DNA of 64,000 bases, taken from Neoechinorhynchus agilis (taxonomy: Eukaryota; Animalia; Acanthocephala). Below, piece after piece: positions 4,451-50,100 of the stretch. Each line of letters opens with the position of its first letter. The stretch's first letter is position 1. The DNA lies in NCBI GenBank assembly GCA_051530055.1, contig CM121342.1, positions 62,001-126,000 of the forward strand, in the 5' to 3' direction. The notes below the pieces were generated by a model. The model had not been told where the DNA came from, searched no databases, and worked only from the letters and a program-made list of their open reading frames with translations. The translations under genes and the position numbers were made by a program.

Positions 4451-4454
4451 AAAA

Positions 4455-7400
4455 TTTATAAACATTACCAATCAAATAAAGATTCGAAATTTGAAAACGC
4501 ATTCGTGTGGCTACCCCTCAGTGCTTAACTTCAATTTAGGCGCGCTTTTGGAAAACATTATCAATCAAATAAAAATTCGAAATTATAAAACGCATTCGTG
4601 TGCTCACTCTTAGTAATTTACTTAAATTAGAAGCACTTTTGGAATACATTATCAATCAAATAAAGACAAGAGAACACAAAATTCATACGTGTACTCACTC
4701 TTAGATCTTTACTTGAATTTATACGCGCTTTTGGAAAACATTATAAATCAAATAAAACCTCGAAATTTTAAAACGCATTCGTGTGCTTCCGCTCAGTGCT
4801 TAACTTTAATTTAGGCGCGCTTTTGGAAAACATTATCAATCAAATAAAAACGAGAGATTACTTAATGAATACGTGCACCCACTCTTGGATCTTTACTTTA
4901 ATTTAGACGGGCTTTTGGAAAACATAATATATCAAATAAAAATTCGAAATTTTGAAACGCATTCGTGTGCTCATTCTTAGTTCTTTACTTAAATTAGATA
5001 GACGCGCTTTTAAAAAACTTTATCAATCAAATAAAAACAAGTTTTTACAAAATGCACACGCGTACTTACTCTTAGATCTTTACTTTAATTTAAACACGCT
5101 TTTGGAAAACATTTTCAATACAATAAAAATTCGAAATTTGAAAACGCATTCGTGTGCTCATTCACAGTTCTACACTTTAATTTAGACACGCTTTTGGAAA
5201 ACATTATCAGTTAAATATTATCTCGAAATTTGAAAACGCATTCGTGCGCTCGCTCTTAGTGCTTCAATTAAATTAGACGCGCTCTTGGAAAACATTATCA
5301 TTCAAATAAAAACAAGAGATTACAAAATGCATAAGTGTACTCACTCCTAGATCTTTACTTCAATTTCGATGCACTTTTGGAAAACATTATCAATCAAATA
5401 AAAACTCGCAATTCTAAAACGCATTCGTTTGCTCACTCTTAGTGCTTGACTAACTTAGACGCGCTTTTGGAAAACATTATCAATCAAATAAAAACAAGAG
5501 ATTAAAAAATTCATGCGTGTACTCACTCTTAGATCTTTACTTGAATTTAGACGCGCTTTTGGAAAACATTATCAATCAAATAAAATCTCGAAATTTGAAA
5601 ACGCATTCGTGTGCTCACTCACAGTTCTACACTTTAATTTATATACGCTTCTGGAAAACATTATCAATTAAATATTATCCCGAAATTTGAAAACGCATTC
5701 GTTCGCTCGCTCTAAGTGCTTCAATTAACTTAGACGCGCTTTTGGAATACATTATCAATCAAATAAAAACAAGCGATTACAAAATGCATACGTGTACAAA
5801 CTTTTAGATCTTTACTTTAATTTGGACACGCTTCTGGAAAACATTACCAATTAAATAAAGATCCGAAACTTGAAAACGCATTCCTGTGCTCACTCTTAGT
5901 GCTTCACTTAAATTAGACGAACTTCTGAAAAACATTATAAATCAAATAAAGACAAGAGATTACAAAATTCATACGTGTACTCACTCTTAGATCTTTACTT
6001 GAATTTATACGCGCTTTAGGAAAAAATTATCAATCAAATAAAGACAAGAGATTACAAAATGCATTCGTGAACTCACTGATACATCGTTACCTTAACTTGG
6101 ACACGCTTTTGGAAAACATTATCAATCAAATAAAAGCAAGAGATAACAAAATGCAGACGTATACCCACTATTAGATCTATACTTTAATTTAGACGTGCTT
6201 TTGGAAAACATTATCAATCAAATAAAAACTCGAAATTTGAAAACGAGTTCGTGTGCTCGCTCTTAGTTATACACTTAAATTAGACGCGCTTTTGGAAAAC
6301 CTTATCAATAAAATAAAAACAAGAGATTACAAAATGCATACTTGTGCTCGATGTTAGATCTTTACTATAATATGGACGCGCTTTTGCAAAACATTATCAA
6401 TCAAATAAAAATTCGAAATTTGAAAACGCGTTCGTGTTCTCACTCTTAGTGCTTCACTTAAATTAGACGCGCTCTAGGAAAACATTGTCAATCAAATAAA
6501 AAGAAGAGATGACAAAATGCATACGTGTACTCACTCTTAGATCTTTACTTTAATTTAGACGCGCCTTTGGAAAACATTATTAATATAATAAAATCTCGAT
6601 ATTTGAAAATGCATTCGTGTTCTCACTCTCAGTGCTTAACTTTAATTTAGGCGCGCTTTTGGAAAACATCATCAATCAAATAAAAATTCGAAATTTGAAA
6701 ACGCATTCGTGTGCTCACGCTTTGTGCTTAACTTAAATTAGACGCGCTCTGACAAAACATTGTCAATCAAATAAAAACAAGAGATAACAAAATGCATACG
6801 TGTACTCACTCCTAGATCTTTACTTTAATTTAGAAACGCTTTTGGAAAACATTATCAATGAAACAAAAATTCGAAATTTGAAAACGCATTCGTGTGCTCA
6901 CTTTTAGTGCTTCACTTAAATTTGACGAACTTTTTGAAAACATTACCAATCAAATAAAAAAAGAGATTTGAAAACGCATTCGTGTACTCACTGTTAGTTC
7001 TTCACTTAAATTTAGACGCTCTTTTCGAAAAGATTATCAATCAATTAAAAAAAGAGATTTTAAAACGCATTAATGTACTCACTCTTAGTGCTTAACTTTA
7101 ATTTGGACGCGCATTTGAAAAACATAATCAATCATATAAAAGCTCTTGATTAAAAACGCATCCGTGTACACACTCATTGATCTTCTCCTAAATTTAGACG
7201 CGCTTTCGGAAAACATTATCAATCAAATTAAAACTCGAGATTTGAAAATTCATTCGTGTGCTTATTGTTTGTGGTTAACTTTAATTAAGACGCGCTTTTA
7301 TAAAATATTATCAATACAATAAAGACCAGATTTGAAGACGCATTCGTGTACTCACTCTAAGATCTTCACTTTAATTTAGGCGCGCTTTTAGAAAACATTA

Positions 7401-7930
7401 TCTATTCAATAAAAACTCGAGATTTGAAAGCGCACTCGTACACTTACTCTCAGCGCTCCACATTAATTTAGACGCGCTTTTGGAAAACACTATCACTATA
7501 ATAAAAACTGGAGATTTGAAAACGCATTCGTGTACCCACTCTTAGTGCTTCGGTGTAATATAGAGGCGCTTTTGGAAAACATAATCAGTAAAACAAAAAC
7601 TCGAGATTTGAAAACGCATTCATTTACTCACTCATAGTACTTTGCTTTAATTTAGACGCGCTTTTGGAAAACATTATCAATGCAATAAAAACAAGAAAAT
7701 TTTTTACGCATTCGTGTACTCACACCTTGTGCTTCACTTCAATCTAGACGCGCTTTCGGAACACATTTTCAATCAAATAAAACAAGAGATTTGAAAACGC
7801 ATTCGTTTACTCACTCTTTGTGCTTCGCTTTAATTTGGACGCGCTTTTGGAAGACATTATCAATTTAATAAAAACTGGAGATTTGAAAACGCGTTCGAAT
7901 ACTCACTCTTTGTGCTTCGCTTTAATTTGG
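4455..7930. repeat. Tandem satellite, ~91-92-bp monomer, ~38 copies, two alternating subtypes
   Basis: TTTTGGAAAACATTATCAATCAAATAAA recurs every 91-92 bp (about 4546, 4638, 4729, 4820, 4912 and onward). Confidence 0.95.
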
Positions 7931-9445
7931 AGCAGAAATAAAATTTGTAGAGATCGGGTGAAGGGGTTGATTCCGCGAGCTTCTTATAGTCGTTAGATTC
8001 GCTTACCAGCCTTTTCAACGCGTTGGAACGATTCGCCATCTCTCGCAGGGCTATTCGTCTCGAATCGATAACCGAGAGCAAGATGGATTTAAACCCGAGT
8101 CCGTCTCTAGAGAGTGGTAGGAAGATTACTCCGTCGTTCAAGTAGTGAGGTAGGAAAAGCAGCCTCTTCAAACGGACTCTCCAGTACTGATCCAAATATG
8201 TTAAACTCGTCAGTGAAATATCTTGCGCTGCTTGAAGTCTGAAAAGCACGCTTGGGAGGCCGTAGTCGTTTATTAAGTGTGCCGACTAAGTAGGGCTGAG
8301 GCCGGTTTGTCTTGTAGCTCTAAAGAGATCGTCGATGGCTTTCTTCATAGATGGAAGGTCGGTATCCTTAAATGGCGTTCCGCCCAAGTACTTGATTGGA
8401 TCGCCGTCGAGTATGGTATTAATCGTATCCGTTCCAACCTTGATGCTAGGACGATACTCAATCACCATTTTCCATTCCTGAAGTTTTGGATGCAGGATGC
8501 GCACTTCTGCGCACTCAACGACAGTCCCATTGAGCCCAAGAGGTCGACTGTAAGGCCTATCGTATGGTTCAGTTGCTCCGCATTGTCTGCCATGATTAGC
8601 ATGTCGTCGGCGTATATTAGATGCGATATCCTGCCTGTGCCAAGGTCTATGCCTATGTTGTCCTGTCCGAGCTTACCAACTAGCGTGTCGACGCAGGCGG
8701 CGAATAAGAACGGTGACAGTGGATCGCCTTGTGTTACCCCTCTAGAGATCCTAATCGGACCGATTGGTTTGCTAGCAGGATGGTTAATAGAGGTCTGTCC
8801 GGTGTTTAGCATATTTCTAACATATCGCTTGATGTAATGCGGGCAACCAAGATTCGTCAGACCGTTGACAACCGCACCGTGGCACACCGTATCAAACGCG
8901 GACTTTATATCCAGAACTGCGAGAGCTAGTGGACGTTTGTTAGACCTTGTGTAGCGGATAATGTTTCTTAACGTCATTAAATTGGTTAAGCATGCAGCTG
9001 AGCCGAACGCTGTCTGACCCCCCGAGAAACTTGTCGAGTTTCCCAGCCTTGACAAAACGATCCTGTGAAGCACTCTCAGTAAGATCGAAGACATTGTGAT
9101 CGGACGCCAATCTCCGATAGTTCCTATGGATTCGTCGTTCGCACTGTTCTTAGGTAGGAGGACTGTTTTGCACATGTTCCACGAGCGAGGGCAATCTCCG
9201 CATTGCAGTATCGCATTGAACAGGACGCACGCGAAAGTCAGCTTATTATCGAACCGACTTATGTCTCTGAGTGAGATTCGGTTGGAACCGGGCGAAGACG
9301 ACGACTTCACTCCCCTCATTGCAAGACGTACTTCCTCGATTGAAACTGGCGGAAAGGGGATTGCCGGTTCTAAAACCCGCGGGTACGACGAGTCGGGTTC
9401 GTGACCTCCGAAGAGTTGTTTGAAGTGGTCAGCGACGAGCGAGGG
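7931..9445 (-). mobile_element. R2-like RLE element copy A, RT and thumb only, truncated at both ends
   Basis: ORF 8462..9319 has WRPIT, LDIKSAFD, GVTQGDPLSP and IYADD; ORF 7860..8249 has the thumb motif IFLPLSRDGLGF. Confidence 0.9.
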
Positions 9446-12400
9446 TTTTGGCTACTACCTCTTTGATGCACTTATAGTATGCTTCTTTTTGTGCAGCGAT
9501 TTCTTCGGCTCTGGTTTTTGTTGTTTCATAATAAACGGCGAAATCAATTATGTAAGCACGTTTCTCCGAGTTTTCGATTAGTATCAAATCGGGCTTATAA
9601 AGCCGTCCTCCGGGGTCGTGCACTCGGTTATCTGTGTGACATTCATAGCGTGAGCCCCACCGTTTTTTAACGCCCATATAAAGCGTTTCTGCACCGCGTC
9701 GTGGCGCTCAATCATAGCCTGTGTGATTCTAATGCATTCGTTGAATGCATGTAGTTGGCTCTCGATTTGTGCTGTGCAATGTCTGCATTTTTTGTTCTGT
9801 TTTTGTCCATTCGCTGCAGGTTTGCGCCCACCTCAAGCATATTGTATCTTGTCTTTACCAGTTCGACGTATTGGTGATGATTGTCCTGCCGGTAGCGGAA
9901 TGATAATGTCTAGTGGTCGAAATGGCCGTTGGTAAAGGCATCGATTCCTTGCGACTGTGTTGAAGTCTGTCGCCACTTATTCTCCTGATTTCGTATGAAA
10001 TATTGGTGCATTGTTTTTGATGATTTATTGTAAGATGCACCGCCAATAGTTAAGAGATAGTTGTCGATCTGTGTTTTTTGCTTCGTTTCCTTAATGAGTT
10101 CCGGGTAGCGACGCTCCACTGCATTAAGACAATTCAAACGGGCTGTCAGTATTGAGTACTTGATGGAAGTGAAACCAAGCCCTCCTCTGCTCAATGGTAA
10201 AAACATGATCCCGTCATTTGTTGAATGCGGCAGGAACAGCAGTTTTTTTAGTCGAGTCCTCCAGACATGCTCTAATTGCTCAAGGGCCGTGATGGAAAGA
10301 TCGTGGGCAGCTTGAAGCGACGAGATTAAGGCAAATATTCCGTAATCATTTAAGAGATGAGCCGATTGTGTTGGGCTAAACCCTGTTTTTTTTCGTACAA
10401 TTGAAAAGCCAATTAACTTCTTCGATCGCAGATGATACTTCGGAATTTTTCCAAGGCCTGTTGCCCAAGTACTTAACGTTGTCTCCGTCTAGGATTGTGT
10501 CAAGTTCAACGTTGCCTATTTTAACAGCAGGTACCACGTCGATCACCAACTTGTTATTCACAAAACGGTGCGAGTAAGAACGGCATTTGCTTGGTGAGGG
10601 TTGCAGTCCCTTTTTGGCGAGGCCTTCATGAATTATATCTAGCATTGTTTGCAGCTCTGAGGGATTATCCGCCATCAGTAGAATGTCGTCAGCATATACT
10701 AGCTGGTTTATCCGCCCAAATTTGGTTGAGCATCCGGTCCCTAACTTATCTACTTGGCGTAGTACATCATCGATACAAAGTGCAAACACTAGAGGTGAAA
10801 GCGGATCCCCTTGTTTGACTCCCTGACGGAATGCGATGGGGTCGGAAGGTTTTGCGCTTGAGAGGTGAACCCTTGTATAAGACGATACGAATATTTCCAT
10901 TAGGTAGCGTCGTAGATGGTCAGGACATCCATGCTGGAATAAAGCTTCGTTTATTGTGCGGTGGCTCACTGTATCGAAAGCGGCGGTAATGTCCAATATA
11001 GCAAGTGCCATTGTTTTCTTTTCAAGTCGTTTAGCTTTTACACATTCCTTCAATATGAAAGAGTTCGCGAGACATGCCGAACTGTCGGAAGCTGATTGGC
11101 TGGTATGTAGTTCGATTGACTTCTTAAGCCGCTCAGCAATGAGTCGGTGAAAAATTCTTAAAATAACCGACGAGATTGTTATGGGCCTCCAATTCGCTAT
11201 CGATTTTAACTCTTCGTCAGTCTTCCCATTTTTTGGCAGCAATAATGTCTTATTCTCTAGCCACGCGCGAGGAGGTTTTCTTGCTTGTAGAATAAAATTG
11301 AAAAGCGTGGTTAAGCCGGCCAGGTGTTTATCAAATGCTCTTATGCTCCTTACTGAAACTTTGTCGACACCTAGTGCGCTGTTGGATTTGATACCTTTCA
11401 TTACCGCCTCTATCTCTTCGGCCGTGACGGCGTGCCAGAGCTCTGGTATGCCTGGTTGGTGTTCCAATCGTGGCGCCGGAATGTACTCATGTGTTCCTTC
11501 AAAGACAGAGCGTAGATGCTGCACTATCGAGTCGGAGTTGTGTGTCGGTTGGCGTCTTTCATCGGATTTGAATATCTGATTTGCCAGACGGCTGGTGTTA
11601 TTGAAGTACAGGGCTCGATAGCGTCTTCGCATAAGTTCCAGTGACTGCCTTCTGTTTAATCCGCGTGAGCGCTCGCATGGGTAGCATCCTGACTCGTCAA
11701 TCCAAACATTATAAGACGTTTTTGTCACTACTCGGGACCGAATACGTCTGGGATTTTCCGAGTGTTCGGTGTTTACTACGAACTCACAACGGTAGGCTGA
11801 GGCTGCACTCCACAGAATGAATTCCTTCGAGATTTCCTGGTCCCTTTGAAGCCCAGTAACCATCTCCTCCAAGTTAACGTTCGCGTCTCGTATATTTCCT
11901 GCGATTCTCTGAAAATGCTCGGGGTCCCCGTTTATTTTATCCAATTCCTCCACTGAGCTGGATTCTTGCTCACATGAAATGCAATTGTTGCCATCGTTTG
12001 GATTGAAGATCGCCTTATTTTAATAATTTTTAGACCCAGTGACTTCGCTTTAGACATAATAGAATTTCCGCCAGACTGGTGCCTTCCAGGGTTAAGATAT
12101 CGGGTATAACGCTCACATACTGCGTTCACAAAATCTTGTCCAACATGGGTATCGCAATTACGCATCTCCTCACTTTCACTCTCTAAGAATCGCCTGTACC
12201 GACGGTGGAGCTATGGCCTCTTCAGGCAGTCATTTTAGAATTCCAGCGGTTCAGCTGTTGTAAAAGAGCCTGCGGACAGATCGCTCATATTCTGAGAAAA
12301 AACGCAAGAGTCTAAGGATTTACTTCTTGTTGTATCGTAAAATCCGGTCCCATTACTGCAATTATATGGGTTCGCAACTTGAATGCTGACCTCGCTGGGT

Positions 12401-13209
12401 TGGTTCCGAGTGTTATAGGAATCTGGGAACATAGTTTGGCATAGCCGACTGTCTTCATGGTCGTCGCTGTCTGAGATAAGCGTACCTTCGCGGTTGCAGA
12501 ACGCTGGTATTTCTGCCACCTTCGAACTTGCGGCTGTACTTAAAAGGCACGCCTTGCTGTCCTCCATGGATAAGTCCGTTCTATGACTGTCGATTGTATC
12601 TACACTGCTAACTGACAACGGATCTGCTGCTAATAAAGGTCCGATCGTTTCGTCCGTAGTTTCCGTAATTCCGACACTGACCGAAGGGGGCGTAGGTGCA
12701 TCGCCATCTTTGGTAATTGCTAAGCTACACTGATTGCAATGTGAACGCACAGCCGGTAGATTTCGAAAAGATTTGAGGCAGTTACAGCAAAGAAACGTTA
12801 TTGTCTTGGCGCCATGCGAGCTTTTTGCGTGTGCCATAATACTGTTGTACCGCCCAATGCCTAAGAGAGACAACTGGCAGGCGGGACACCTAGCCGGCGT
12901 GTCATCTATGTTTGAGTACATTATGCTTACGGAATCCCTGCGTTCCGAGTGAGGTGATTTTGTCGACGCTTCAGTCATTAACTGTCGATATCTGTTCGGG
13001 TATTTTTCCTTGCATCTTCTCAAATGGATACCCACACTGCGAGATTCAATGTGTTCGTAGTTATCACATAATGGGCACTGCCAGGCTGCTACGACGGTGT
13101 TATGTTGTGCTCTTAGGTGCTCTATATGTAGCTTGTTTCGCGTTCGGCCTATGAATTGATCCTCACACAAATGGCAAGCAATATTTTGGACCTCTGTCGA
13201 CAAGTAACG
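9446..13209 (-). mobile_element. R2-like RLE element copy B, near full length but frameshifted (4 ZF, OTU-like domain, RT, CCHC, RLE)
   Basis: ZFs in ORF 12235..13263; RT in 10376..11953 (GVKQGDPLSP, YADD); CRHC..ESQLH..NEC knuckle near 9700-9790; RLE KPDL..IIDFAVYYE..K..Y in 9429..9677. Confidence 0.92.
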
Positions 13210-13858
13210 CAATAAAGTTTTCGAATAGGTCGAGGACAATTCGTCCCCAATGCCTCTAATCATTCGCTTTACCAGATAAAACTGTCTTATGCAACACCAG
13301 CTTTCCTGGGGGAAACTTCGAAGGGAATCAGCTACTGGATGGTTCGATTAGTCTTTCGCCCCTATACACAAATCTGACGATTGATTTGCACGTCAAAAAC
13401 GATACGGACCTCCACCAGAGTTTCCTCCGGCTTCATCCTACTCAGGCATAGTTCACCATCTTTCGGGTCTCAACATGTTCGCTCAATTGCGAACAACAAC
13501 CAACAGTACCTTGCATGTGCCATCCATCATAGGCGATGACCCGGCTAACGGCCAATAACCGCAGCTGGTTATCACAATCATTAAAAAAAACTCGCGTTAA
13601 CTATGCTATCCAGCTTTATTTATTTATCTGGATAACTCGCGCATTTGTTGAACTCCTTATCCCGTGTTTCAAGACGGTTCAAATGATGCCGCCGTTTTAC
13701 CCGCATTATCTTCTCGAACATCCGACTGAATCCGTAATCAACATCGACGAACAAGCCTAACAGTGAGTGAAACAACACCGAAAGAATCCAACGATGCTGG
13801 CGATTGCGTCATCGGAATGCTCAATTTTAGTTTAAAAACTCAACCTCAACCGACCGTT
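13210..13858 (-). rRNA. 28S rDNA pseudogene fragment (end of D2, D3, through helix 38)
   Basis: Reverse strand contains CCGTCTTGAAACACGG, GACCCGAAAGATGGTGAACTATGCCTGAG, GGGGCGAAAGACTAATCGAACC and GGTAAAGCGAATGATTAGAGG..ACCTATTC.AAACTTT. Confidence 0.92.
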
Positions 13859-14030: not shown

Positions 14031-14625
14031 TCACAGTTGTAGTTTAGGACGTCGGTCAATTTCGTACATCGCAACGCGCTGATTCCGAATCTGTATCCAG
14101 ATTTGCGATAGCTGTAATGGTTCTTGAGTTATTTGTTGTTCAATTTTGAGACAAACTCCCTTGATTATTGATATTAAAACGTCGATAAATTTAAGATAAA
14201 ATGAACTTTTTTAGATCTACTTTTGACGCTGAATTCACCTGCAATAACGGTTTGATGTGGCTTTTTAAATTTTTACACTTAGTTTAAGGATTGAAGTTCA
14301 TAAAAGGCACCTGAATTAAATCTGTAGTACTCGTTAGTGGTTACGAAATGATAAAACATTTTGAGCATATATAATGCGCTGATTTCAATGGTGTTTTCTA
14401 ATTTTAATGAATCTTGCAAATTTAGTGATCTTTGACTCTTGTAACTTTTGACCAAATATGATAATGCGATTTCCGATTCGAATATTGCAGCTATAGTTTA
14501 GGACGTCGGTTAATTTAGTACATCGCAAAGCGCTGATTCCAAATCTGTATCAAGATTTGCGATATCTGTAATGGTTCTTGAGTTATTCGTTATTTAATTT
14601 TTAGACAAACTACCTTGATTATAGA
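14030..14625 (-). repeat. 455-bp satellite, ~1.3 units, inverted relative to the 2.6-4.4 kb array
   Basis: Reverse complement matches the 455-bp unit (GCGCTGATT, TTATTCGTTGTTCAAT, CTTGATTATTGATATTAAAAC). Confidence 0.85.
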
Positions 14626-16550: not shown

Positions 16551-16554
16551 GGGA

Positions 16555-19879: not shown

Positions 19880-22300
19880 AAAAATATTTCGTTTTTCATC
19901 ACTTGCCATCTCCGCGTTAATTTGTCCCGGCAAACCATTCGAATAATTTGCTATAGTTATCCATTGTTGTCTTAATGTTCAAGGGGCACTCTTTTTTCTC
20001 CATCCTTGAGCACATCGGCCGCAAGCCTTAAGATGTTCGCCAAGTACAGGGTTCTGTTGCGTCGTCTCTGGTTCCCGATCTTCAAATATATTCAGGCTTC
20101 GACGCCTTGCCTGATTCATCAGAACGGATATTATATACTTATCTTGCGAAAAACCGGGACAAAGGATTCGGCTTTCTTACTTATCAAAAGGTAGTGGACC
20201 GTAAAATCACACCAGTATGCTTCGGCAGCTGCGAATATCACAAACATTGGAGATACTACGGTACCTTCTTGGAGTCCACCGAGGTGAATTTACAGTGCTA
20301 CGTTCGCGCCGGCGAAGCTTAGTGCAACCTTTTGGTAGTTCTCCAAATTGCTATGTACCTCTTTTGAGGTTATCGTAGTTACCTTTTTCCACAATGAAGG
20401 GCTTCCCGCCACGTGATAGGCGATCGTACCAAGCATCTGTTGAGGACCATCTTAAACGCCAACTGTTAGGACGAGAAGTCTTAAATTTTTTTAGAAGGAG
20501 TGATTCTTTACCATTGGAAAAGTTTCCTTTCGCCTTTTTTCGCCAATTTATTAACATCAAAGTCGATTCTATATCATGCTTCTGGAAAAACTTCTTCCCT
20601 CGCTCTAGAGGTAGCAGGTACTTCAGTGCTACGCCCGCAAGGCGACTATTGTTCATATCGCTTTGCTACCCCATCAACAAATTTTAAATTGGGGTTAGCC
20701 TTCCTTTTAATTGAGGATACGTCGATCGTTCTCGAGGTGACTGCGGTATCTGCGATGCAAATTCTTTTTACCGGAAGCCCTAATTCGGCATGTCATTACC
20801 CATGCTCTATTGAGCGGAAACTAAGGCCTCCCCTGCTCAGCGGTAAGTTTATCACTCCGCTATTTGTATGCGGGCAGAAACAATAGTCTTTTTAACTTGG
20901 TCCTCTAATGCTTATCAACTTTCCTTAAATCGCTTATTGACATAAACACCGCGTTCTGCAGGTCTACAAGGATACTTGGGAGTTCGTAGTCGTTTCATAA
21001 ATGAGCGGCTTGTGTTGGCGATAGTTGAGCATCCTTGGTTTTGTCCTACAAATCATCGAGAATTGCGAGTGTCTCACTTAATTCGGTTTTACGCCAAGGT
21101 GTACCATCAAGGTAGAATGTGGAGTCACCTTCTCATATGGGTTTTACATTCATCCCATCGATTGCTACAAAAGGCGTACTACCAACGCACAATTTCCAAT
21201 TTTTATAGTATTGTGAACAATTTTGGCATTTCTCGGAAGATAATTTTAGCCCCCTCTCTTAGTTGATGAACAGCTATGCTTGTCACTGCCTTTATTTCGC
21301 CTTCATCCCAATCAGGGCAATGTCGTATGCGTATGATATGCGCGGGACGTAGGTATTCTTGTTTCGGTATCCTTTGCCTCTTGCAGATCGACATCGTCCA
21401 TACAAATGGCAAATGACGTTAGTGAGAGTGGGTCTCCTCGTTTCTCACATCGATCAAATCGAATAGGCTTGGTTGGAGGGCCCTTTGGGCAGTGTATTTT
21501 TTTTAAAAGTGACTTGAATGCGTTCGATATATAACGATTTGTTGTTCGTAATATGTCCGATTGTTAAGCAGGCTCTCAATAACTTTTGCGGGAACAACGT
21601 GACCCCGAGCAGGATTTTTATGCATATGGAAAGCAATAGCATTTAGGCACATATTGCTACAACGCCGTAGCTTGATAATTTTTAATCCCATGGCTTTCGC
21701 TTCGGATTGGTTAGTGGTGCGGCTGGTGAACTTTTCACACCAAAGGTAATCACAATACATCTCATTGACTTCGTCGATATGATTTCGGTTGATCGAACCA
21801 CTGTGATCACGAAGTAGTACTGAAAGTGACTCCAGAAAACCGCGGTACCGATTATGAAGGTAGGTTGACTTTAGCGAGGTAAGTACGAACTCGCAAGCTT
21901 CTGCAGTCGTAAAGCGAGTTGGGCAAACTTCATTGTTCGGTTGATTGCTGGAACAGTAATCACTGCAAACCTTGATACGACGGATGTTGGATCGACGGAA
22001 ACCATCATTAAGGTTGGTTTGAGGCGGAATGTGATTGAGTGCGTCCTTGGATGTGTTTACTTCCGAGATACAAGTGCCAGCCCCAATATGGGTCACTCCG
22101 GAGTGCGCTGGATTGTTTGGCCGATGCACACCTTGTCACACTGGGTACACTATATTTTATACACACCTCGAGGCAAATCATTGCGCCCCTTCTTTTTAAA
22201 CGTCCCTTGGAATAATCGGGTTCGATTTCAATGGGATATGAAGTGGCCATCGATTGGATGGACCGAATAGATGGCAAAGACGTCTACTGTAAATTTGTTT
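19880..22300 (-). mobile_element. Highly degenerate R2-like RLE element (OTU-like domain, internal deletion, RT remnant, thumb, RLE)
   Basis: AMGLKIIKLRRCSNMCLNAIAFH in ORF 21503..22129; KRGDPLS..FAICMDDV near 21400; KRLLFLP...LPLSRG near 20850; IRSDESGK.SKP near 20100. Confidence 0.75.
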
Positions 22301-26259: not shown

Positions 26260-26460
26260 TTCTGTACCATTTGCGTTAACAATCATCAACTGGTTGCTTA
26301 CATCCGGATCGTCGATTGTTTTCTCTTGACTAAGCTGTTGACATTCGTTGTCATTTTTGCGAAGAATATCTGAAGCGGAGGGAGCGCATGGCCCCGGCGG
26401 AGGGGAAATAACTACAGGCTTCGAAAGTTCAATAGCGTTGTTTGTGGTTTTAGACAAGGT

Positions 26461-26510
26461 AATAGCTACGTCCACCGTTTACCCGCGCTTAAATTAACTT
26501 CTTCACTTTA

Positions 26511-26541
<31 letters not shown>

Positions 26542-26715
26542 CGTCAACACCGATTACAGCTATCGCAATGCTTTGTTTTAATTAAACAGTTGGATTCCCC
26601 TTGTCCATACCAGTTCTAGGGCAGCAGTTTAACGTTAATCGGATCCCCGCGCAAGAAGCGAGCGTGCCCGTTTGGATACGCCGAACAAACGCGGAACATA
26701 GCTATCGCTGCCCAC
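26461..26715 (-). rRNA. 28S rDNA fragment running up to ~10 nt before the R2 site
   Basis: Reverse strand: CTAGAACTGGTATGGACAAGGGGAATCCAACTGTTTAATTAAAACAAAGCATTGCGA..GGTGTTGACGCAATGTGATTTCTGCCCAGTGCTCTGAATGT..GCGCGGGTAAACGGTGGACGTAGCTATTAC. Confidence 0.93.
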
Positions 26716-26721
26716 AACAAT

Positions 26722-31004: not shown

Positions 31005-31049
31005 GAAGAAATTAATTTTAGCGCCAGTAAACGGTGGACGTAACTATTA
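31005..31049 (+). rRNA. 28S rDNA fragment ending ~11 nt before the R2 site
   Basis: GAAGAAATTAATTTTAGCGCCAGTAAACGGTGGACGTAACTATTA matches the 26461 piece at 40 of 45 positions. Confidence 0.85.
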
Positions 31050-33000
31050 ATTCCTGGCAAAAATCTACAGAGAAAACTGGCATCGTATATTCGGAGTCAA
31101 TAGTGGCCCGCGTTCATCGGTTACTAAGCACTCATCTTTAGATGACGCTCATCGTACTGATCAACAGCAACACCAACATCATGAATTAAACAAACAACAG
31201 CAAACCAAGTGTGGCCAAAGACCGAGCAGCAATAATCCAACAGGCAAAACAATAAGAATTCATTACCCGATCGATCAAATCAACACGCTTCTTTGCCTGG
31301 CATGCAGTCTCGGATGTGTTGGACAGTCAAAATTTAAGCTACTACTCGCGCACCTCCACGGGGCCCATGAATTTGCGGAGGTTATTTGGATCTGTCCTAT
31401 TTGTGACCGTTTCGAGCATCGCGAATCTCGGAGTGTTGGACTACATTTCCGACGATGCAAAGCAATCCAACTTGAAAAATTCAGAAACTTGGTTTTGAGT
31501 TCTTCGAATCCTCATTGCAATGTTAATCCGGCAGTCTCCGCAATCATTTTTTACAAATCAGGAGAGGACGATCCGGCTGCTTGTCCATCATGTGAACTTT
31601 TACTGGTTGGAAAAGGAGGTTATAGCGCTCTTGTGAGCCATCTGGAAGACGCCCACAAATCAAACTCGATTATCTTTCAATGTCCAGCATGCGTTGTTAA
31701 CTATGGTACACTGCCAGCTAATCGGTCACATGTTATGCATTGTCAGACCGCTTCAAAAGATAAAAACTTGAAATCAGCACACAAACCAGAAGACTCAGAA
31801 AACTGCCTTAATTCAAATCGCGCAACCTCAGAAGCTTTTAAAGACTTTTCTCTAAAACGATTGCCAAGGCTATCGGATCTAGGAGGTAATCTTTTACAGC
31901 ACTCGCTTAACAAGACATGCCGAATGGATGATGATTTCAACGATTTTGTTCAGCAGGAAGTAAGGGTTACTACAGAAAGCAGTGACGACACAGGTGTTAA
32001 ATCTTCTCATCTTTCTCTAAATGCTGTGTACAATGACGCTCAATGCAATGGCGATGCATCAACCTCTGAAATTGCCACAGTCAGACCAGCCCCAACTTTT
32101 ATTCCTACCTCAACAATGACGTCTACCTTAAATCCAGTATATACCTCCGCGCAAACCTGTATCAGGTGCCTACACCCAATATTGGGGCATGCGCGTTTTC
32201 AGCACAGGAGGGACACGAACTTATTCTAAACTGTCTTCAACGACGGGATATTCATCCGCGCTAGCGTCATTTCTAAGCAATGAATCTGAAGTGCTACGCA
32301 ATCAAGCTGGTCCAGTGAATCAGGAATTCATCCAATTAAAGAATGCGCGATATCTGTCGTACTTAAAATGTGGGCGACAAGGTTCTCACGAATGCCCGTC
32401 GATGTCCCGCGCGTGCCGTCTCGGCCTCAAAATTATAAAGCTAAAGAAAAATTCAACAATGGTACTGGTGACCGCCGCCTTTCTCGTCCTCGAGAAACCT
32501 ACACAATGGAGGAGAGTAAAGGACCGCATCTTGAACTCTGTTTCACCTCATATAGTAAAAATGATTCCTGATGCAAATCTCACATTAAATCACACACTGG
32601 ATGCTACTAAAAATTACAACGAACTATTAGTTCACTTCATATTGAGGGCCGCAGCGACTGCCTATCAATGCGATTTTGTCGGGCATACTCCAAGCGACGA
32701 TGTTCCTATTCGAATTCGATCTCGCACAGTCAGGTACTTATCCCTTCGAAAGCTCGCGAGGCCTCAAATCAAAGCAGTCACACGACCCTATTAAAGGACG
32801 TTAACCTTCTAAACGACTATGCAATTCCATCCTTAATGGTTAAGCTCGAAGCCTCATGCGACATCGCCCACCAATCTCAGACGTAAAGACGAGCAATGGA
32901 GGTGCAGGCTAAAGAAGATTCTTAAGCTTACAAGGAACTTAGGGGAAGGAGCTTTCGATGAGTGTGAGCTGAGTCTAATCTCTCCAAGTAATGCTTTAGT
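31050..33000 (+). mobile_element. R2-like element copy C, N-terminal part (4 ZF + OTU-like), 3'-truncated
   Basis: CLAC..HLHGAH; ICPIC..ESRSVGLHFRRC; CPSC..HLEDAH; CPAC..HVMHC; LGLKIIK..AAATAYQCDF. Confidence 0.85.
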
Positions 33001-46199: not shown

Positions 46200-47150
46200 T
46201 AATGCGTTCCAAGTTACACGAGCCCAAGAAGAGAAATTAGTGGGTACAATTAATGAGAGACAAGTCAATGCTCCTCCTCCGTCAAAGAACGAAGAAGCGA
46301 CAGCTCAAGCAGATAAGTCTCGCGCTATACACGAAAACAATTTGCATCGAACAATTTGTATTTCTCACCGATTTCAAGAGAAAAATCTGAATTTATTTGA
46401 TGTAGTCCAACAAGTACAACTCTAGATTCCAAGCCTTAAAATCCAAGTAAGTGGTAATGAACAGTTAAAAGCGAGGAGATACAAAATCCTTTTGCTGATA
46501 AACATAAGTGTACTCGAGATCGAAATTACAAACGTAACAAGAACACATCCTGAACACACTACAAAGAGGGTACGATTCGCGAAAAACGGGCAGGTTCGTG
46601 ATATTAATGATCCAAAGGTTGAGGAGGTCCCTATAATTCCTATGGAGAAGATTTCATCTACAGAAGAGGTGCGGGAACACCGGCCAGCTAATGCGATGCA
46701 ATTTCTTCAATAGAGCATGGAGGATAATAAGATGCATCTCTGCCTGAGGAGTTTTCTGCAATGCTAGATGCAGGAACTATCAGCCATAAAGGGAGCATTT
46801 AACAAATCCTACCTCGACAGTATGAGTTGGAGATATCTCCACTACTTGAGGCGACCTACAGAGAAGCAACAAAACAAATGTAAAAGCCTCCTTGAATTCG
46901 GACTTCGACCAGTAAACATAGCTAGAGGTCCTGATCAGCTTTTTCGTGTAATGAGCACCATGCTCCATGGAAATACAACGCCAAGCCTTAAGGTTATCGA
47001 AAAAATAATTAATGTTATAAATACTCATCAAAGCGATATGCGGAAGCTCGCTCTAAGGACTGCCGATTACTAATAATAACTAATTTAATTCGTAAAGGTG
47101 ACGCCAGATATCGCACACGACGTCTAGAACCAGTTGCTCAACAGTTATAA
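46200..47150 (+). mobile_element. Fragment carrying an OTU-like domain, probably a diverged R2-like N-terminal linker
   Basis: FGLRPVNIARGPDQLFRVMSTMLHG aligns with the OTU Cys box GL....VPGDGNCLFRAV..QL.G. Confidence 0.6.
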
Positions 47151-47159
47151 CCGGAATAT

Positions 47160-50100
47160 TATTCAATTATGACGTTGCTGTTCCAATCCATCTCAAGGAT
47201 TTGCTGGCCCACTCCACAGAGGGAATCCACTCAAAAGGAAGTCTCGACAGAATTTGCAGAAAGACGCAGCGGAAGGTTAGGCGTTGTTCTGGGGGCCTTC
47301 CTCTGGAATAAAAGACCAGACCTGAAATAGCCCATGCGCACCATATCGTTTTACAATTCTTGGCGCTAAGTCCGATACGTGCGGCACGTCTGGCCTTAAC
47401 TCTTGCCGTTTTCAGAAGTTTTTTCATCTTTCGCATATCAGATGCTGTCGATAGGTTATTCGTGAGTGTATAACCCAAAATATCGAGTCTCTTGTATACA
47501 GGGTCGAAATCTAACCCAAAAAACTCCTTTATACACTCTCTGATATTCTTCTTGCCTATTCTAGATTTAGATTTTATTAAAAATTTCGTCTTTTTTTGGT
47601 TCAAAGAAAGACCCATTTGAGGTAGGTGCGATTTTAAAAATTCAGCACGGCAGCCAATTTCGCACGTGCTCGTATGTAATTAGATTCTTTAATGACCACA
47701 GAGAGGTCATCGGTATACATCGTTATGCCCCGACAAACGGTGCAATTTTGAATGAAAAATTGGGTTGCCAAGCAAAAGAGTATGGGTGATAACGGTGAGC
47801 CTTGTGGAACACCCTTCGATTGATAAAACATAGTCCCTGCTGGATCGTCTACAAAAAAAATTGTTTGCATTTTAGTATGTTGTTTACCCTCGCAATAATA
47901 TTAAAAGGAAAACTAAAAAATCTTAAAATATTTACAATGAAGGTGATGTCGATATTATCAAAGGCTTTCGATATATCAAAAGAAATGAGAATGTTTGTCG
48001 ACATAGGATTTTTATAAAAATTATCTATAATATCATTGAGCGCAGTATGAACGGATTTCCCTGGTAGGAATCCATGACATCGCTCATCAGTTAGATGATG
48101 TATACAAGAAAATTCCAAAATAGATCTCGCCAAGACACGCTCGTAAATGGATACGAAAGAATTTTGAATGGGTATGGGCCTGACATCACTAGGTGAAGAA
48201 ACAGCCTTGCCTCTCCTTTTACAAAGAAAAATTCTTTTTGAAATGTTTATCTGAGGCCATTCCTCAGGTGAAGCTGCCAAAATGTGCTCTGCTAAACCTA
48301 TGATATTAGTTTGATTTAGCACATTCGTAGCTTTAAAACATGGGGACGAGCCATTGCTGGATGGAGGATTCCTGGAACCCCACCATTGGATAAAATCGTT
48401 CCTACATTGATCAAAACGACGCGGTTTAATTTTAATAAAATTATGGCAGACCGGAATCTTACTCGCTCCATTACAATGCTCAGCGCACAGAGCGCTCAAA
48501 ACATTTTCCCACCCCGAGGTTTTAATCCAATTAGCTGCGGCCCTCTTCCAAGGACGGAATCGTTTTGGTGCAGCAACCTGCCACCAAGGAGAAGAATATG
48601 GCACAAAAGATCTAATTCTCTTACTGTCGCAGTCTAATTGAAAACGAGTTCTACAAGGCCAATAGAAAGCGGACCAAAACCTAATAGAATCCTTATCATC
48701 GAATACCTTAGCCATAAAAAGTTTCTTGCCATACATGGAAAGTAATTTTGGTATTTGAATATTCGAGCCTATGCATCTCTTGACCATTGTCAAAATTGAA
48801 TCGCTAGCTGTGGCCACAAATTCATTCAGGTCGTTAAGCTGCATAAAGGCTCCAAATGTGGTGGCCAACTTTATTGCTGCATTAAAGATGTCTATATTGA
48901 GAGCACTCAATTTAAATTTACGGCACAAGAGAGTATTACTCGCCAAAACCCATACTAGGACATCATGTCCAGCAACTCGAAAAATTGATGATTGCGAAAC
49001 GAGTTTGGGTTTAACGGGAATGTTACTTCGTGCAAGGCACAAATCTAAAAAAGAATGGGACCTGCCGTCAGAAAAGGTAGGAGCAGTAGGAATAAGAAGT
49101 TCATGTGTGTCACCTGAACGTAAAATCGCCGAAACAGAAGTCAATTCGGGCTGCTAAAACATTTTTCATAATATCCTTATTCTGTGACAAGTGAATTTTT
49201 TTAGGTCTAATATAAAAATTCCCTAAAAGTAATTTCCTCCCCTGAAACGAATCGAAAATATAGCGTATGATAAATCTGGGGAGGTATACTCTGAAATTAG
49301 AGTTGGCTGGAGGTCCGTCCTAAAAATGGATAATAAACCTTGAGAATTGCTCAAAAAAGGCTTTGTGCAAAATAAAGAGTGTTCACTAGATAAGATATTA
49401 AAACTACTAGGAAGGTTGTTAAGGGAGTGGAGCGATTTAGTTTCTTGTACAAAAGTAATATCACATTTCTGTACTTCGGATAAAAGGCCAGGGATACCCA
49501 GAAGCCCGCCTGCGTTCCACTGCGCTATCCTCAATTCCATCGAGGCTTACCTTTGATGAGATTTTGGACTTTGTCCGCACAGACCTGAGCTTGTTCTTCG
49601 ATTATATTTCTCACGAGGTCCTCGTCTTCGTGCACCCTGACACAGGAGCTCGACTTCGTTTGCATGGTGATGGCGCAACACCGGTCGTTATTTGAAATTT
49701 ATTGAATTTGGTCGAGAGTGTCTCTATAAGACCATTTAACTGAGCCGCAAGTCTCCTCTCCAGCCCTTGGATGGCTGCGGTGATTCGCAGATCCACCATA
49801 TCCAAAATTTTGGATGAAAAGTCTGCGAATTTTTTCTCCAAGGTGACCTCATACGTCGGTCGAGGAATATCGACATATTTGGCAATTTGGTGGATCGGTT
49901 GTGTTTTTTCCGTCACATTGGTATTAGCATTCCGTCTTACGGGATTGTCGGATGACGACTCTAGCCTCCTCTGGGTCATTCGGGAGTCCAATGAGTTTTT
50001 ACTTTGAGATCCCTGTCGTCTCGCCCAACCAATATACTCTTTGAAGGCTGCACAGTTCTTTGAGAAGGCGCAATGTCCATCACGATTGCAGTTGGAGCAG

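What the first reader, a model, noticed from the sequence alone, without database searches (positions are those of the whole stretch)
11675..12040. R2-site retrotransposons carry a catalytically dead OTU (deubiquitinase-fold) domain before the RT
Seen: four diverged copies share a block in this position. Copy B reads LGLKIIKIRRSSIQTMATIAFH..PEHF..LEEMV..EFILWSAASAYRCEFVV..SGCY. The others are AMGLKIIKLRRCSNMCLNAIAFH (21540-21692), LGLKIIKLKKNSTMVLVTAAF..AAATAYQCDF (32420-32740) and FGLRPVNIARGPDQLFRVMSTMLHG (~46897). Established: the OTU Cys box is GL....VPGDGNCLFRA+..QL.G and the His box is G.HY. By my alignment the catalytic Cys is Q, M, M and Q, and the His is C in copy B; the domain is ~122 aa. 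Cysteine proteases occur in some RLE elements (Ulp1 type in NeSL), but I know of no 28S R2-site element with an OTU fold, active or dead. Inference: a retained pseudo-enzyme used for ubiquitin or RNA binding, or to shield the RNP from host ubiquitin pathways.
Basis: partly seen in the sequence, partly recalled or inferred. Interest (0 to 1): 0.85.

Follow-up and report, generated by a model that had tools for sequence, protein, structure and literature searches.

The report
Dead OTU domain inside R2 retrotransposons
A lineage of ribosomal-DNA-specific R2 jumping genes in thorny-headed worms carries, between its DNA-binding zinc fingers and its reverse transcriptase, a well-conserved copy of the OTU deubiquitinase fold that has lost both catalytic residues, a domain make-up I found reported for no R2 or other non-LTR element.

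Summary
The observation and the headline interpretation both hold. The window comes from Neoechinorhynchus agilis (Acanthocephala) and is a graveyard of transposons and 28S fragments.

A profile built only from the window copies found 15 protein clusters among 1.84 billion. They come from N. agilis, Pomphorhynchus laevis and three unnamed assemblies, and include two intact R2-type ORFs of 1492 and 1177 aa.

Two AlphaFold models (pLDDT 86.9 and 91.7) match only OTU domains in the PDB. The best is OTUD3: E 1e-6 to 5e-6, TM 0.77-0.83, rmsd 2.4 Å. Sequence profiles point the same way but weakly: OTUD5 is the top PDB hit at E 0.019, and Pfam OTU stays below its threshold.

The catalytic Cys position is L, M or Q in all 16 sequences. 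No His exists in the His box; an invariant Pro-Cys sits there instead. The domain is about as conserved as the RT (26-41% against 35-40% identity), so it is not neutral debris.

R2-site insertion is confirmed by junctions in the window and in relatives.

What the domain does was not tested. My best guess is a non-catalytic binding module, for nucleic acid or ubiquitin. This is a new variant of a known kind.

The parts
11675..11953 (-). Copy B, C-terminal two thirds of the pseudo-OTU domain. It runs from VEELDK... through AASAYRCEFVV (helix plus strand) to the invariant Pro-Cys (YPC, 11675-11683).
   Evidence: aligned with the family; fold and 78/80
11935..12054 (-). Copy B, N-terminal part of the pseudo-OTU domain: strand GLKIIKI, the 'Cys loop', and a helix that starts at Gln 11998-12000 in place of the catalytic Cys. 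It is read in a different frame from the rest; the frameshift is near 11950.
   Evidence: OTUD5 alignment register
12055..12210 (-). Copy B, conserved three-helix module upstream of the OTU fold (LHRRYRRFLE ... ERYTRYL). Its identity is unassigned; it may be Myb-like.
   Evidence: helices H2-8, H15-29 and H37-51 with pLDDT 81-92
11570..11629 (-). Copy B, motif RRRYRALYFNNTSRLANQIF. It is conserved in the family and marks the start of the N-terminal extension of the RT.
   Evidence: invariant R..ALY...T..LA.E
12235..13212 (-). Copy B, N-terminal zinc-finger region and the Ser/Thr/Asp-rich spacer of the R2 protein.
   Evidence: weak C2H2-type hits; homologous to copy C at 31258-31752
10463..11227 (-). 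Copy B, reverse transcriptase domain.
   Evidence: Pfam RVT_1 E 6.3e-33
9429..9677 (-). Copy B, restriction-like endonuclease region (YKPDLILIE...YIIDFAV). It is truncated at its C-terminal end, where a 5'-truncated second R2-like element begins (9436 downwards).
   Evidence: compared with the C-terminus of P0054
13216..13760 (-). 28S rRNA pseudogene fragment (Rfam LSU positions ~600-1100) fused to the 5' end of copy B by a 1.48-kb deletion relative to the paralogous locus L001.
32258..32791 (+). Copy C: three-helix module plus pseudo-OTU in one open frame (Met 32459-32461 at the Cys position). It stops before the last two strands.
31005..31053 (+). 28S remnant (…AGCGCCAGTAAACGGTGGACGTAACTATTA) at the 5' junction of copy C, ending about 12 nt short of the R2 site.
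21506..21859 (-). Copy A: three-helix module and the first ~50 residues of the pseudo-OTU (Met 21650-21652 at the Cys position), followed by an internal deletion into the RT.
26403..26716 (-). 28S fragment (Rfam LSU 2121-2337) that runs up to the R2 site (…GCTATTACCTTGTCTAAAA|CCACAAAC…). This is the 5' junction of an R2-type element, later split by an LTR retrotransposon.
46768..47169 (+). Copy D: the most OTU-like Cys box (GLRPVNIARGPDQLFRVMSTMLHG, Gln 46936-46938) and the helix/strand remnant NQLLNSYNRNIIQL. It is interrupted by stop codons.
   Evidence: its first ORF is P0046
20134..20490 (-). FAAAEAYWCDFTV, with two stop codons; Gln 20437-20439 at the Cys position.

Best explanation
The block is a pseudo-enzyme: an OTU (ovarian-tumour deubiquitinase) fold of about 130 residues built into the single protein of a lineage of R2 retrotransposons of acanthocephalans.

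The order along the protein is: C2H2/CCHC zinc fingers, acidic spacer, three-helix module, pseudo-OTU, RT N-terminal extension (ALYF..T..LA), RT, thumb, CCHC finger, restriction-like endonuclease.

Shown:
- The fold is OTU.
- The nucleophile Cys is replaced by Leu, Met or Gln, and the His is replaced by a hydrophobic or aromatic residue, in every member seen.
- The elements sit at the 28S R2 site.
- The domain has been kept for as long, and about as tightly, as the RT in several diverged sub-lineages. These include intact ORFs from at least two acanthocephalan classes.

Inferred:
- The domain cannot cleave ubiquitin.
- It was captured once, from an OTUD-type gene or from another mobile element, at or before the base of this lineage.
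- It now serves retrotransposition through binding rather than catalysis.

The role I think most likely (about 0.4) is a nucleic-acid-contacting or scaffolding module of the R2 ribonucleoprotein. It sits where canonical R2 proteins carry the Myb/spacer segment that contacts target DNA, next to the RNA-binding RT extension. It is as basic (pI 9.2-9.8) as the known nucleic-acid-binding parts of the same proteins.

Binding of ubiquitin, a ubiquitin-like protein or a charged E2 is the main alternative (about 0.3).

All five copies in the window are dead relics of this family.
For: Family is real: the window-only profile A2 found 15 clusters in 1.84 billion proteins. Named members come from N. agilis and Pomphorhynchus laevis.

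Intact elements: the 1492-aa and 1177-aa ORFs carry RVT_1 and a C-terminal KPD...IDFAV endonuclease motif.

Fold:
- Model of P0048 residues 371-600: pLDDT 86.9; the top 50 Foldseek PDB matches are all OTU; OTUD3 E 1.1e-6, TMt 0.81.
- Model of the P0054 core: pLDDT 91.7, pTM 0.86; OTUD1, OTUD5 and OTUD3 at E 1.5e-6 to 5e-6; OTUD3 TM 0.77/0.83, rmsd 2.4 Å over 141 columns.

Sequence:
- The family profile's best PDB hit is OTUD5 (E 0.019). 'sdLilrtia' aligns on 'GACLFRAVA', and 'lqaAanvyqcdfvv' aligns on 'MQAMAEMYNRPVEV'.
- Pfam OTU appears at E 0.033 for the family consensus and 0.066 for one member.

Dead site:
- The residue at the first turn of the helix after the Cys loop is L x9, M x4, Q x3 and never C.
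- The last hairpin has no His; Pro-Cys is invariant in 9 of 9.

Constraint:
- P0059 vs P0061: pseudo-OTU 40.6% identity, RT 38.6%.
- P0054 vs P0059: pseudo-OTU 26.5% (gapless over 170 aa, E 1.5e-25), RT 35.5%.
- The spacer upstream is unalignable.

R2 site:
- 3' junction in L003/L004: '...GGTTC|TAGCGAAATGCCTCGTCATCTAATTAGTGAC'.
- 5' junctions in the window at 26403-26470 and 31005-31053, and in L001 at ~8806.

Charge: pseudo-OTU pI 9.2-9.8, against pI 4.1 for the spacer and pI 4.7-5.4 for OTUD1/OTUD5 fragments.
Against: - The sequence-only evidence for OTU is below curated thresholds: Pfam 15.1 bits against a cut-off of 23.3.
- No single window copy hits OTU, and the window-only profile does not hit OTU structures.
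- The fold assignment rests on AlphaFold models built from only 17 sequences. The two models share the same alignment rows, so they are not independent.
- 'Dead' is inferred from sequence. No assay was run, and an invariant Cys lies close to where the catalytic centre would be.
- The charge argument is weak. Most of the R2 protein is basic, and the OTUD comparison uses partial sequences.
- The three unnamed sources (SRR34340284, GCA_028748465.1, GCA_028748445.1) could not be assigned to species.
- Whether relatives outside Acanthocephala (rotifers) have the domain is unknown.
Confidence: 0.72

Rival explanations
1. The pseudo-OTU is a non-catalytic reader or blocker of the ubiquitin system. 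It would bind ubiquitin, a ubiquitin-like modifier or a charged E2. OTUB1 is reported to inhibit UBC13 without catalysis (my own knowledge). The effect would be to damp DNA-damage ubiquitin signalling at the nicked rDNA target, or to protect the R2 protein from degradation.
For: - The fold is that of a ubiquitin-binding enzyme family, and the closest structures are ubiquitin-bound OTUD5, OTUD3 and OTUD1.
- Other mobile elements keep OTU or Ulp1 domains: Helitron and Ginger1 (PMC2836005); NeSL and Utopia-1_TSP (PMC4640811). This suggests a recurring link between transposition and ubiquitin/SUMO pathways.
- The domain is under strong constraint.
Against: - Both residues lining the cleft that takes the ubiquitin tail are replaced by bulky hydrophobic residues.
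- The domain is strongly basic, unlike the acidic OTUD fragments.
- Conservation of a ubiquitin-binding surface could not be examined.
Confidence: 0.3
2. The domain is still a protease with a rearranged active site that uses the invariant Cys of the Pro-Cys motif. It might, for example, process the R2 protein itself.
For: Pro-Cys is invariant in 9 of 9 sequences that reach it. By the pattern of the last hairpin, it lies two residues after the position where OTUs have the catalytic His, which is near the old active centre.
Against: - No conserved His, or other general base, occurs anywhere in the domain (one search lists all columns conserved at 75% or more).
- The canonical nucleophile position is hydrophobic.
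- R2 proteins are not known to need processing (my own knowledge).
Confidence: 0.05
3. The block is a neutrally decaying remnant of a once-active OTU, or of captured host sequence, with no present function.
For: All five window copies are broken. The catalytic residues are gone.
Against: - Intact 1177- and 1492-aa ORFs keep the block.
- It aligns without gaps between lineages whose RTs are only 35-40% identical, and it is as conserved as the RT.
- AlphaFold folds it with pLDDT above 90. The neighbouring spacer has diverged beyond alignment.
Confidence: 0.03
4. The resemblance to OTU is spurious: a chance motif match plus an over-confident structure prediction. The block would then be an R2-specific domain of another fold.
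For: Sequence-profile E-values to OTU are only 0.02-0.07. The alignment behind the models is shallow (17 rows).
Against: - Two models, of members only 20-21% identical over the modelled region, each give 50 of 50 top PDB matches to OTU domains of many subfamilies at probability 0.72-1.00 (nearly all 1.00).
- The independent sequence hit has the correct motif order and register.
- The helix predicted to start at the Cys-equivalent residue is what the fold requires.
Confidence: 0.04

Closest known systems
Canonical R2 retrotransposons (e.g. Bombyx R2Bm; A-clade and D-clade R2 of animals)
   Same: - A single ORF with N-terminal zinc fingers, RT, a C-terminal CCHC finger and a restriction-like endonuclease.
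- Insertion at the conserved 28S site, with the 3' junction directly before TAGC(C)AAATGCCTCGTCATC.
- 5' junctions with small 28S deletions.
   Different: - An OTU-fold domain of ~130 residues, preceded by a three-helix module and an acidic spacer, lies between the zinc fingers and the RT extension.
- The published architecture is 1-3 zinc fingers directly followed by a Myb domain (PMC13188248).
- No Myb is detectable by Pfam in these proteins.
- That 2026 survey of more than 330 new R2s mentions neither OTU nor Acanthocephala.
[quoted passage not shown]
   Same: An RLE-bearing non-LTR element that carries a papain-superfamily ubiquitin/UBL-protease-type domain upstream of the RT (PMC4640811).
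   Different: - The domain there is Ulp1/C48 and is described as a protease; here it is OTU/C85 and lacks the catalytic dyad.
- The targets differ: spliced-leader and U2 genes against the 28S R2 site.
- The host phylum differs.
OTU domains of Helitron and Ginger1 DNA transposons
   Same: An OTU fold recruited by a mobile element (PMC2836005).
   Different: - Those are DNA transposons, and their OTU domains are recognised by Pfam PF02338 and aligned with yeast Otu1.
- Here the host element is a non-LTR retrotransposon, and the domain is too diverged for Pfam and catalytically void.
Human OTUD3, OTUD5 (DUBA) and OTUD1 catalytic domains
   Same: They are the best structural matches (TM up to 0.83, rmsd 2.4 Å). 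The only sequence-level hit, OTUD5, has matching order of the Cys-box helix, the helical lobe and the 'AxxxY...V' helix-strand.
   Different: - Sequence identity is 12-15%.
- Cys is replaced by Leu, Met or Gln.
- The His-Tyr-Asp/Asn box is replaced by (hydrophobic)-Pro-Cys.
- The domain is basic instead of acidic.
Pseudo-deubiquitinases and non-catalytic OTU functions (OTULINL/FAM105A; OTUB1 inhibition of UBC13). Cited from my own knowledge, not checked here.
   Same: An OTU fold used without isopeptidase activity.
   Different: Those are cellular regulators. Nothing here shows that the R2 domain binds ubiquitin or an E2.

Membership tests
OTU superfamily (Pfam PF02338, MEROPS C85) | OTU three-dimensional fold: a strand, then the Cys loop, then a helix, a helical lobe and a C-terminal antiparallel sheet. 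| tested here: met
   Two AlphaFold models (pLDDT 86.9 and 91.7). All top-50 Foldseek PDB matches are OTU domains; OTUD3 gives TM 0.77-0.83.
OTU superfamily (Pfam PF02338, MEROPS C85) | Significant match to the family sequence profile. | tested here: inconclusive
   - Pfam OTU: 15.1 bits, E 0.033 for the family consensus (cut-off 23.3); one of 16 members at E 0.066.
- The family profile's top PDB hit is OTUD5 at E 0.019.
- Single window copies give no hit.
OTU superfamily (Pfam PF02338, MEROPS C85) | Catalytic Cys at the N-terminus of the helix after the Cys loop. | tested here: not met
   That position is L x9, M x4, Q x3 in 16 sequences. Window codons: 11998-12000 CAA, 21650-21652 ATG, 32459-32461 ATG, 46936-46938 CAG, 20437-20439 CAG.
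OTU superfamily (Pfam PF02338, MEROPS C85) | Catalytic His (with Asp/Asn) in the last beta hairpin. | tested here: not met
   No His in that segment in any of the 9 sequences that reach it. Pro-Cys is invariant there. The exact register is uncertain by one residue.
OTU superfamily (Pfam PF02338, MEROPS C85) | Deubiquitinase or UBL-protease activity. | not testable with these tools
   Needs Ub-AMC or di-ubiquitin assays on recombinant protein.
R2 retrotransposons | Single ORF with N-terminal zinc fingers, RT, C-terminal CCHC finger and PD-(D/E)XK restriction-like endonuclease. | tested here: met
   - P0054 (1492 aa) and P0059 (1177 aa): RVT_1 at E 3e-28 and 3e-37.
- zf-RVT at E 1.8e-4 in P0059.
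- CCHH/CCHC fingers and the KPD...IDFAV motif are read directly.
- Window copy B has the same parts in order.
R2 retrotransposons | Insertion at the conserved R2 site of 28S rDNA. | tested here: met
   - The 3' junction of the P0059 element is followed by TAGCGAAATGCCTCGTCATCTAATTAGTGAC.
- 5' junctions lie 0 to ~25 nt upstream of the site: window 26403-26470 and 31005-31053, and L001 ~8806.
- Copy B itself is joined to 28S position ~1100 only because of a secondary 1.48-kb deletion.
R2 retrotransposons | Myb domain directly after zinc finger 1. | tested here: inconclusive
   No Myb hit in Pfam at E up to 10. A confident three-helix module precedes the OTU fold, but it was not compared with Myb structures.
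R2 retrotransposons | RT groups with R2 in a phylogeny against R4, NeSL, Utopia, Hero and CRE. | not tested
   No reference set was available. The nearest named RT hits include an R2DM-annotated protein, at only ~30% identity.
NeSL/Utopia protease-bearing RLE elements | Ulp1-like (C48) cysteine protease domain upstream of the RT. | tested here: not met
   No Ulp1/SENP structure appears among the top 50 matches of either model. No Peptidase_C48 hit in Pfam.

The most novel reading that the evidence does not exclude
The R2 protein of acanthocephalans uses a dead deubiquitinase fold as a decoy or clamp for the host ubiquitin machinery (ubiquitin, a UBL or a charged E2) at the rDNA break it makes. 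This would locally silence the DNA-damage ubiquitin response or protect the RNP. It would be the first case of a non-LTR retrotransposon manipulating ubiquitin signalling through a built-in pseudo-enzyme.
Probability: 0.2. Interest if true: 0.85.

Novelty: new variant of a known kind. Interest (0 to 1): 0.62.

Why it matters
R2 proteins are the best-understood model of target-primed reverse transcription, and they are being engineered for site-specific transgene insertion. Their N-terminal architecture is treated as zinc fingers plus Myb.

A lineage that has kept a 130-residue pseudo-deubiquitinase in that region, as tightly as its RT, shows that the R2 chassis tolerates, and apparently benefits from, a large foreign domain at this position. 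Together with the Ulp1 domain of NeSL, it is a second independent link between RLE-type retrotransposons and folds of the ubiquitin/UBL system.

It also gives a naturally inactivated OTU domain. Working out what that domain binds could reveal either a host interaction needed for retrotransposition or a new way for an OTU fold to bind nucleic acid.

Finally, it adds R2 elements from Acanthocephala, a phylum that the latest survey I could read does not mention.

Tried and rejected
- Pfam scans of single window copies found no OTU hit.
- phmmer of copy D, and hmmsearch of the window-only profile A1, against PDB sequences gave only chance coiled-coil-type hits.
- The word-indexed protein search found nothing with copy B, and found only the window's own ORF with the family alignment. 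Its sensitivity was too low for this family. The exhaustive HMMER search was what opened the family up.
- Exact look-up of the window's zinc-finger ORF was not on record.
- An alternative frame of copy B reads 'NPNDGNNCISC', which looks like an intact OTU Cys box and is used by the gene model ACOME3_010352 (P0001). I rejected it as coincidence. The family alignment fixes the other frame (GLKIIKIRRSSIQTMATIAFHVSKNP aligns with P0048 GLKIIKIKKSSRMSLSAVAFHVHCNP), and copies A and C have nothing similar in their other frames.
- At first I read copy B's 5' flank as a new 28S target at position ~1100. The paralogue L001 showed this is a secondary deletion.
- dN/dS was not computed. All pairs of sub-lineages are 57% identical or less in the domain, or else identical, so synonymous sites are saturated. 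The window/L001 pair diverged after insertion. I used the comparison with RT conservation instead.
- Rfam found no HDV-like ribozyme in the 5' UTR.
- Rfam found no rRNA in L002-L004 at gathering threshold. The 3' junction was found by eye.
- A metagenome scan for further relatives found none.
- Searches for the assembly accessions in the literature found nothing.
Full report
**Where the window comes from**

The RT reading frame of the element under the finding is 97% identical to a gene model of Neoechinorhynchus agilis, a thorny-headed worm (Acanthocephala). One of the window's own ORFs is on record on a 16.4-Mb scaffold (P0046), the contig length also recorded for the N. agilis gene models P0048 and P0052. 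A second locus from the same assembly (L001) is 99% identical to 5.2 kb of the window.

The window is a transposon graveyard mixed with 28S rRNA pseudogene fragments and satellites.

**The observation**

| Copy | Coordinates | State |
|---|---|---|
| B | 11675-12054 (-) | Read from two frames; frameshift near 11950 |
| A | 21506-21859 (-) | Only the first ~50 residues of the domain |
| C | 32258-32791 (+) | One open frame; lacks the last two strands |
| D | 46768-47169 (+) | Several stop codons; most OTU-like Cys box (GLRPVNIARGPDQLFRVMSTMLHG) |
| E | 20134-20490 (-) | 'DGPQQMLGTIAYHV...FAAAEAYWCDFTV'; two stop codons |

All five are dead copies. The block is nevertheless a real protein domain. 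A profile built only from window translations (A2) was run against 1.84 billion representative proteins. It returned 15 clusters and nothing else, with E-values down to 6e-22 for proteins not encoded in the window.

**The family**

- The named hits are hypothetical proteins of N. agilis (Eoacanthocephala) and Pomphorhynchus laevis (Palaeacanthocephala).
- Three further sources could not be assigned to a species: a Logan assembly of SRR34340284, and GCA_028748465.1 and GCA_028748445.1.
- Two members are intact single ORFs of 1492 aa (P0054) and 1177 aa (P0059). Their order is: CCHH/CCHC zinc fingers, an acidic spacer, a three-helix module, the block, a conserved 'RNRALYF.NT..LA.E' motif, RT (Pfam RVT_1, E 3e-28 and 3e-37), a CCHC finger, and a KPD...IDFAV restriction-like endonuclease.
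- Window copy B has the same parts in the same order from 13212 down to 9429.

**Is it at the R2 site?**

In the window, copy B abuts 28S sequence that ends near position 1100 of the Rfam LSU model, which is not the R2 site. The paralogue L001 explains this. There, 28S runs on for another 1.48 kb to '...GCGCGGGTAAACGGTGGA', about 25 nt short of the canonical site. A ~150-nt 5' UTR and the same ORF follow. The window copy therefore has a secondary deletion.

Other junctions agree:

- Copy C is preceded by a 28S remnant ending '...GGTGGACGTAACTATTA' at 31005-31053.
- The 28S fragment at 26403-26716 runs up to the site itself before a new 5' UTR starts.
- The 3' end of the intact P0059 element is followed by 'TAGCGAAATGCCTCGTCATCTAATTAGTGAC...' in two assemblies. 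From my own knowledge of R2 junctions, this is the sequence that follows R2 insertions.

So these are R2-site elements with the usual ragged 5' junctions.

**Is the block an OTU fold?**

*Sequence evidence alone is suggestive but weak.*

- Single copies give nothing in Pfam.
- Against PDB sequences, copy D alone and the window-only profile give no OTU hit.
- With the 16-sequence family alignment (A3), the best hit among 177,635 PDB sequences is OTUD5 (E 0.019). The family's '...sdLilrtiaf' lies on 'DGACLFRAVAD', and 'lqaAanvyqcdfvv' lies on 'MQAMAEMYNRPVEV'.
- Pfam OTU appears at E 0.033 for the family consensus and 0.066 for one member, both below the curated cut-off.
- For scale, OTUD5 itself finds OTUD3 only at E 1.6e-5 and finds no other OTU subfamily. 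Weak scores are expected for a remote member.

*Structure prediction settles it.*

- A model of P0048 residues 371-600 has mean pLDDT 86.9, above 90 throughout the core. Its top 50 PDB matches are all OTU domains: OTUD3, OTUD5, Otu2, OTUD2, OTUD1, A20, OTUB2, OTULIN and nairovirus OTUs. OTUD3 is best (E 1.1e-6, TM 0.81 on the target).
- A model of the core of P0054, which is 20-21% identical to P0048 over the modelled region, has pLDDT 91.7 and pTM 0.86. Again it matches only OTU domains; OTUD3 gives TM 0.77/0.83 and rmsd 2.4 Å over 141 columns.
- The two models share the same alignment rows, so they are not fully independent. The agreement with the sequence hit makes an artefact unlikely.

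**Is it catalytically dead?**

- Across 16 sequences this position is Leu nine times, Met four times and Gln three times, and never Cys.
- Moving from a Cys codon to CAA/CAG or ATG takes two or three changes. The same substitutions occur in intact relatives. The loss is therefore old, not decay of these copies.
- In the last hairpin, where OTUs have 'G.HY(D/N)', the family has 'G..PC', with no His in any of the nine sequences that reach it and an invariant Pro-Cys.
The register is uncertain by one residue and does not change the conclusion.
- No other His is conserved in the domain.
- 'Dead' is therefore a strong sequence-level inference, not an assay result.

**Is it under constraint?**

Synonymous sites are saturated between all sub-lineages, so dN/dS was not informative. 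Instead I compared the block with the RT in the same protein pairs:

| Pair | Pseudo-OTU identity | RT identity |
|---|---|---|
| P0059 vs P0061 | 40.6% | 38.6% |
| P0054 vs P0059 | 26.5% (170 residues, no gap, E 1.5e-25) | 35.5% |

The spacer just upstream cannot be aligned at all. At least eight diverged sub-lineages in N. agilis alone carry the block. The domain has therefore been maintained by selection in active elements for a long time. The neutral-relic reading is rejected.

**How it most likely works**

*Shown:*

- An OTU fold without its catalytic dyad is an integral, conserved part of the R2 protein of acanthocephalans.
- It lies between the DNA-binding zinc fingers and the RT extension.

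*Inferred:*

- It acts by binding, not catalysis.

Two readings compete.

The domain is as basic (pI 9.2-9.8, net +4 to +11) as the zinc-finger, RT and endonuclease parts of the same proteins. The spacer, by contrast, is acidic (pI 4.1), and fragments of OTUD1 and OTUD5 are acidic (pI 4.7-5.4). The domain also occupies the place where canonical R2 proteins have the Myb/spacer segment (PMC13188248). Both former catalytic positions are filled by hydrophobic residues.

This tilts me, weakly, towards a nucleic-acid-contacting or scaffolding role in the ribonucleoprotein (about 0.4). A ubiquitin/UBL/E2-binding role is the main alternative (about 0.3). A rearranged protease using the invariant Cys is unlikely (about 0.05) because no general base is conserved.

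**Comparison with what is known**

- OTU domains are known in Helitron and Ginger1 DNA transposons (PMC2836005).
- Ulp1-like proteases are known in the RLE-type non-LTR elements NeSL and Utopia-1_TSP (PMC4640811).
- I found no report of an OTU fold in R2 or any non-LTR retrotransposon.
- The 2026 survey of R2 architectures mentions neither OTU, deubiquitinase, Acanthocephala nor rotifers.
- The literature check covers open-access full text only.

The element passes the tests for an R2. The domain passes the fold test for OTU, fails both catalytic-residue tests, and is inconclusive on the profile test. It is best described as an OTU-fold pseudo-enzyme, not as an OTU protease.

**Verdict**

- It is a new variant of a known kind: an R2 element with a new accessory pseudo-enzyme domain, apparently restricted to one phylum.
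- A specialist would be moderately surprised. It does not by itself open a long-standing question, but it is directly testable with existing R2 assays.
- Interest is 0.62.

Noticed in passing
window 13206-13263 (-) and L001 7482-8959: Relative to the 99%-identical paralogue L001, the window has a 1.48-kb deletion that fuses 28S position ~1100 to the 5' end of copy B. As a result, an ATG inside the 28S sequence (GCGAATGATTAGAGG) opens the long zinc-finger ORF listed at 12235-13263.
   Followed up: yes
window 11950-12020 (-); protein P0001 (ACOME3_010352): The other reading frame of copy B reads 'NPNDGNNCISC' exactly over the Cys-box region, mimicking an intact OTU 'DGNC' motif. The public gene model splices through the pseudogene and uses this frame. 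Judged a coincidence from the family alignment.
   Followed up: yes
family alignment A5 columns 138-139; window 11675-11680 (-): An invariant Pro-Cys (9 of 9 sequences) replaces the Tyr-Asp/Asn that follows the catalytic His in OTUs. It is the most conserved feature of the domain and has no explanation yet.
   Followed up: partly
window 12055-12210 (-); P0048 residues 371-435: A conserved three-helix module (LHPRYR.FLE ... Y..YL), modelled with pLDDT 81-92, precedes the OTU fold. It might be the missing Myb-like DNA-binding domain of these R2 proteins. No Pfam match.
   Followed up: partly
window 8304-9436 (-): A second, 5'-truncated R2-like RT (38% identical to copy B) starts exactly where copy B's endonuclease domain breaks off. 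Copy B therefore lacks its last ~70 codons and its 3' UTR. The same arrangement is present in L001.
   Followed up: partly
window 22950-26058 (-) and 27934-29458 (+): LTR-retrotransposon pieces: a Gag with a CCHC knuckle, RT, RNase H and integrase. The first lies between the R2-site 28S junction at ~26430 and the ORF of copy A, and probably split that element.
   Followed up: partly
window 16449-18486 (+): ORFs ending in a GIY-YIG nuclease domain (Pfam E 8.9e-6). This probably marks a Penelope-like retroelement, though no RT was checked in these ORFs.
   Followed up: no
window 14594-16415 (-): A non-LTR element of the AP-endonuclease type (Exo_endo_phos plus RVT_1), unrelated to the R2 family.
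   Followed up: no
window 53966-58777 (-): Three abutting long ORFs (385, 719 and 503 aa). The first has a Gag-like triple CCHC region and the second an RT. This looks like a nearly intact non-LTR element of another clade, without the OTU block.
   Followed up: partly
window 4460-7928; 2625-4454; 62054-63569: A 92-bp satellite (38 copies, with higher-order periods of 183 and 275 bp) and two arrays of a ~454-bp repeat. The same 92-bp satellite flanks the paralogous locus L001 (its bases 1-1650).
   Followed up: no
window 18743-19465 (-): Further 28S pseudogene fragments, 96% identical to the L001 28S. The region appears to derive from rearranged, R2-inserted rDNA units.
   Followed up: no
L001 8806-8960 (+): The ~150-nt 5' UTR of the copy-B family contains a strong hairpin (CUCCGC...GCGGAG) and folds somewhat better than shuffles (z -2.4). 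No HDV-like ribozyme family of Rfam matches it.
   Followed up: partly
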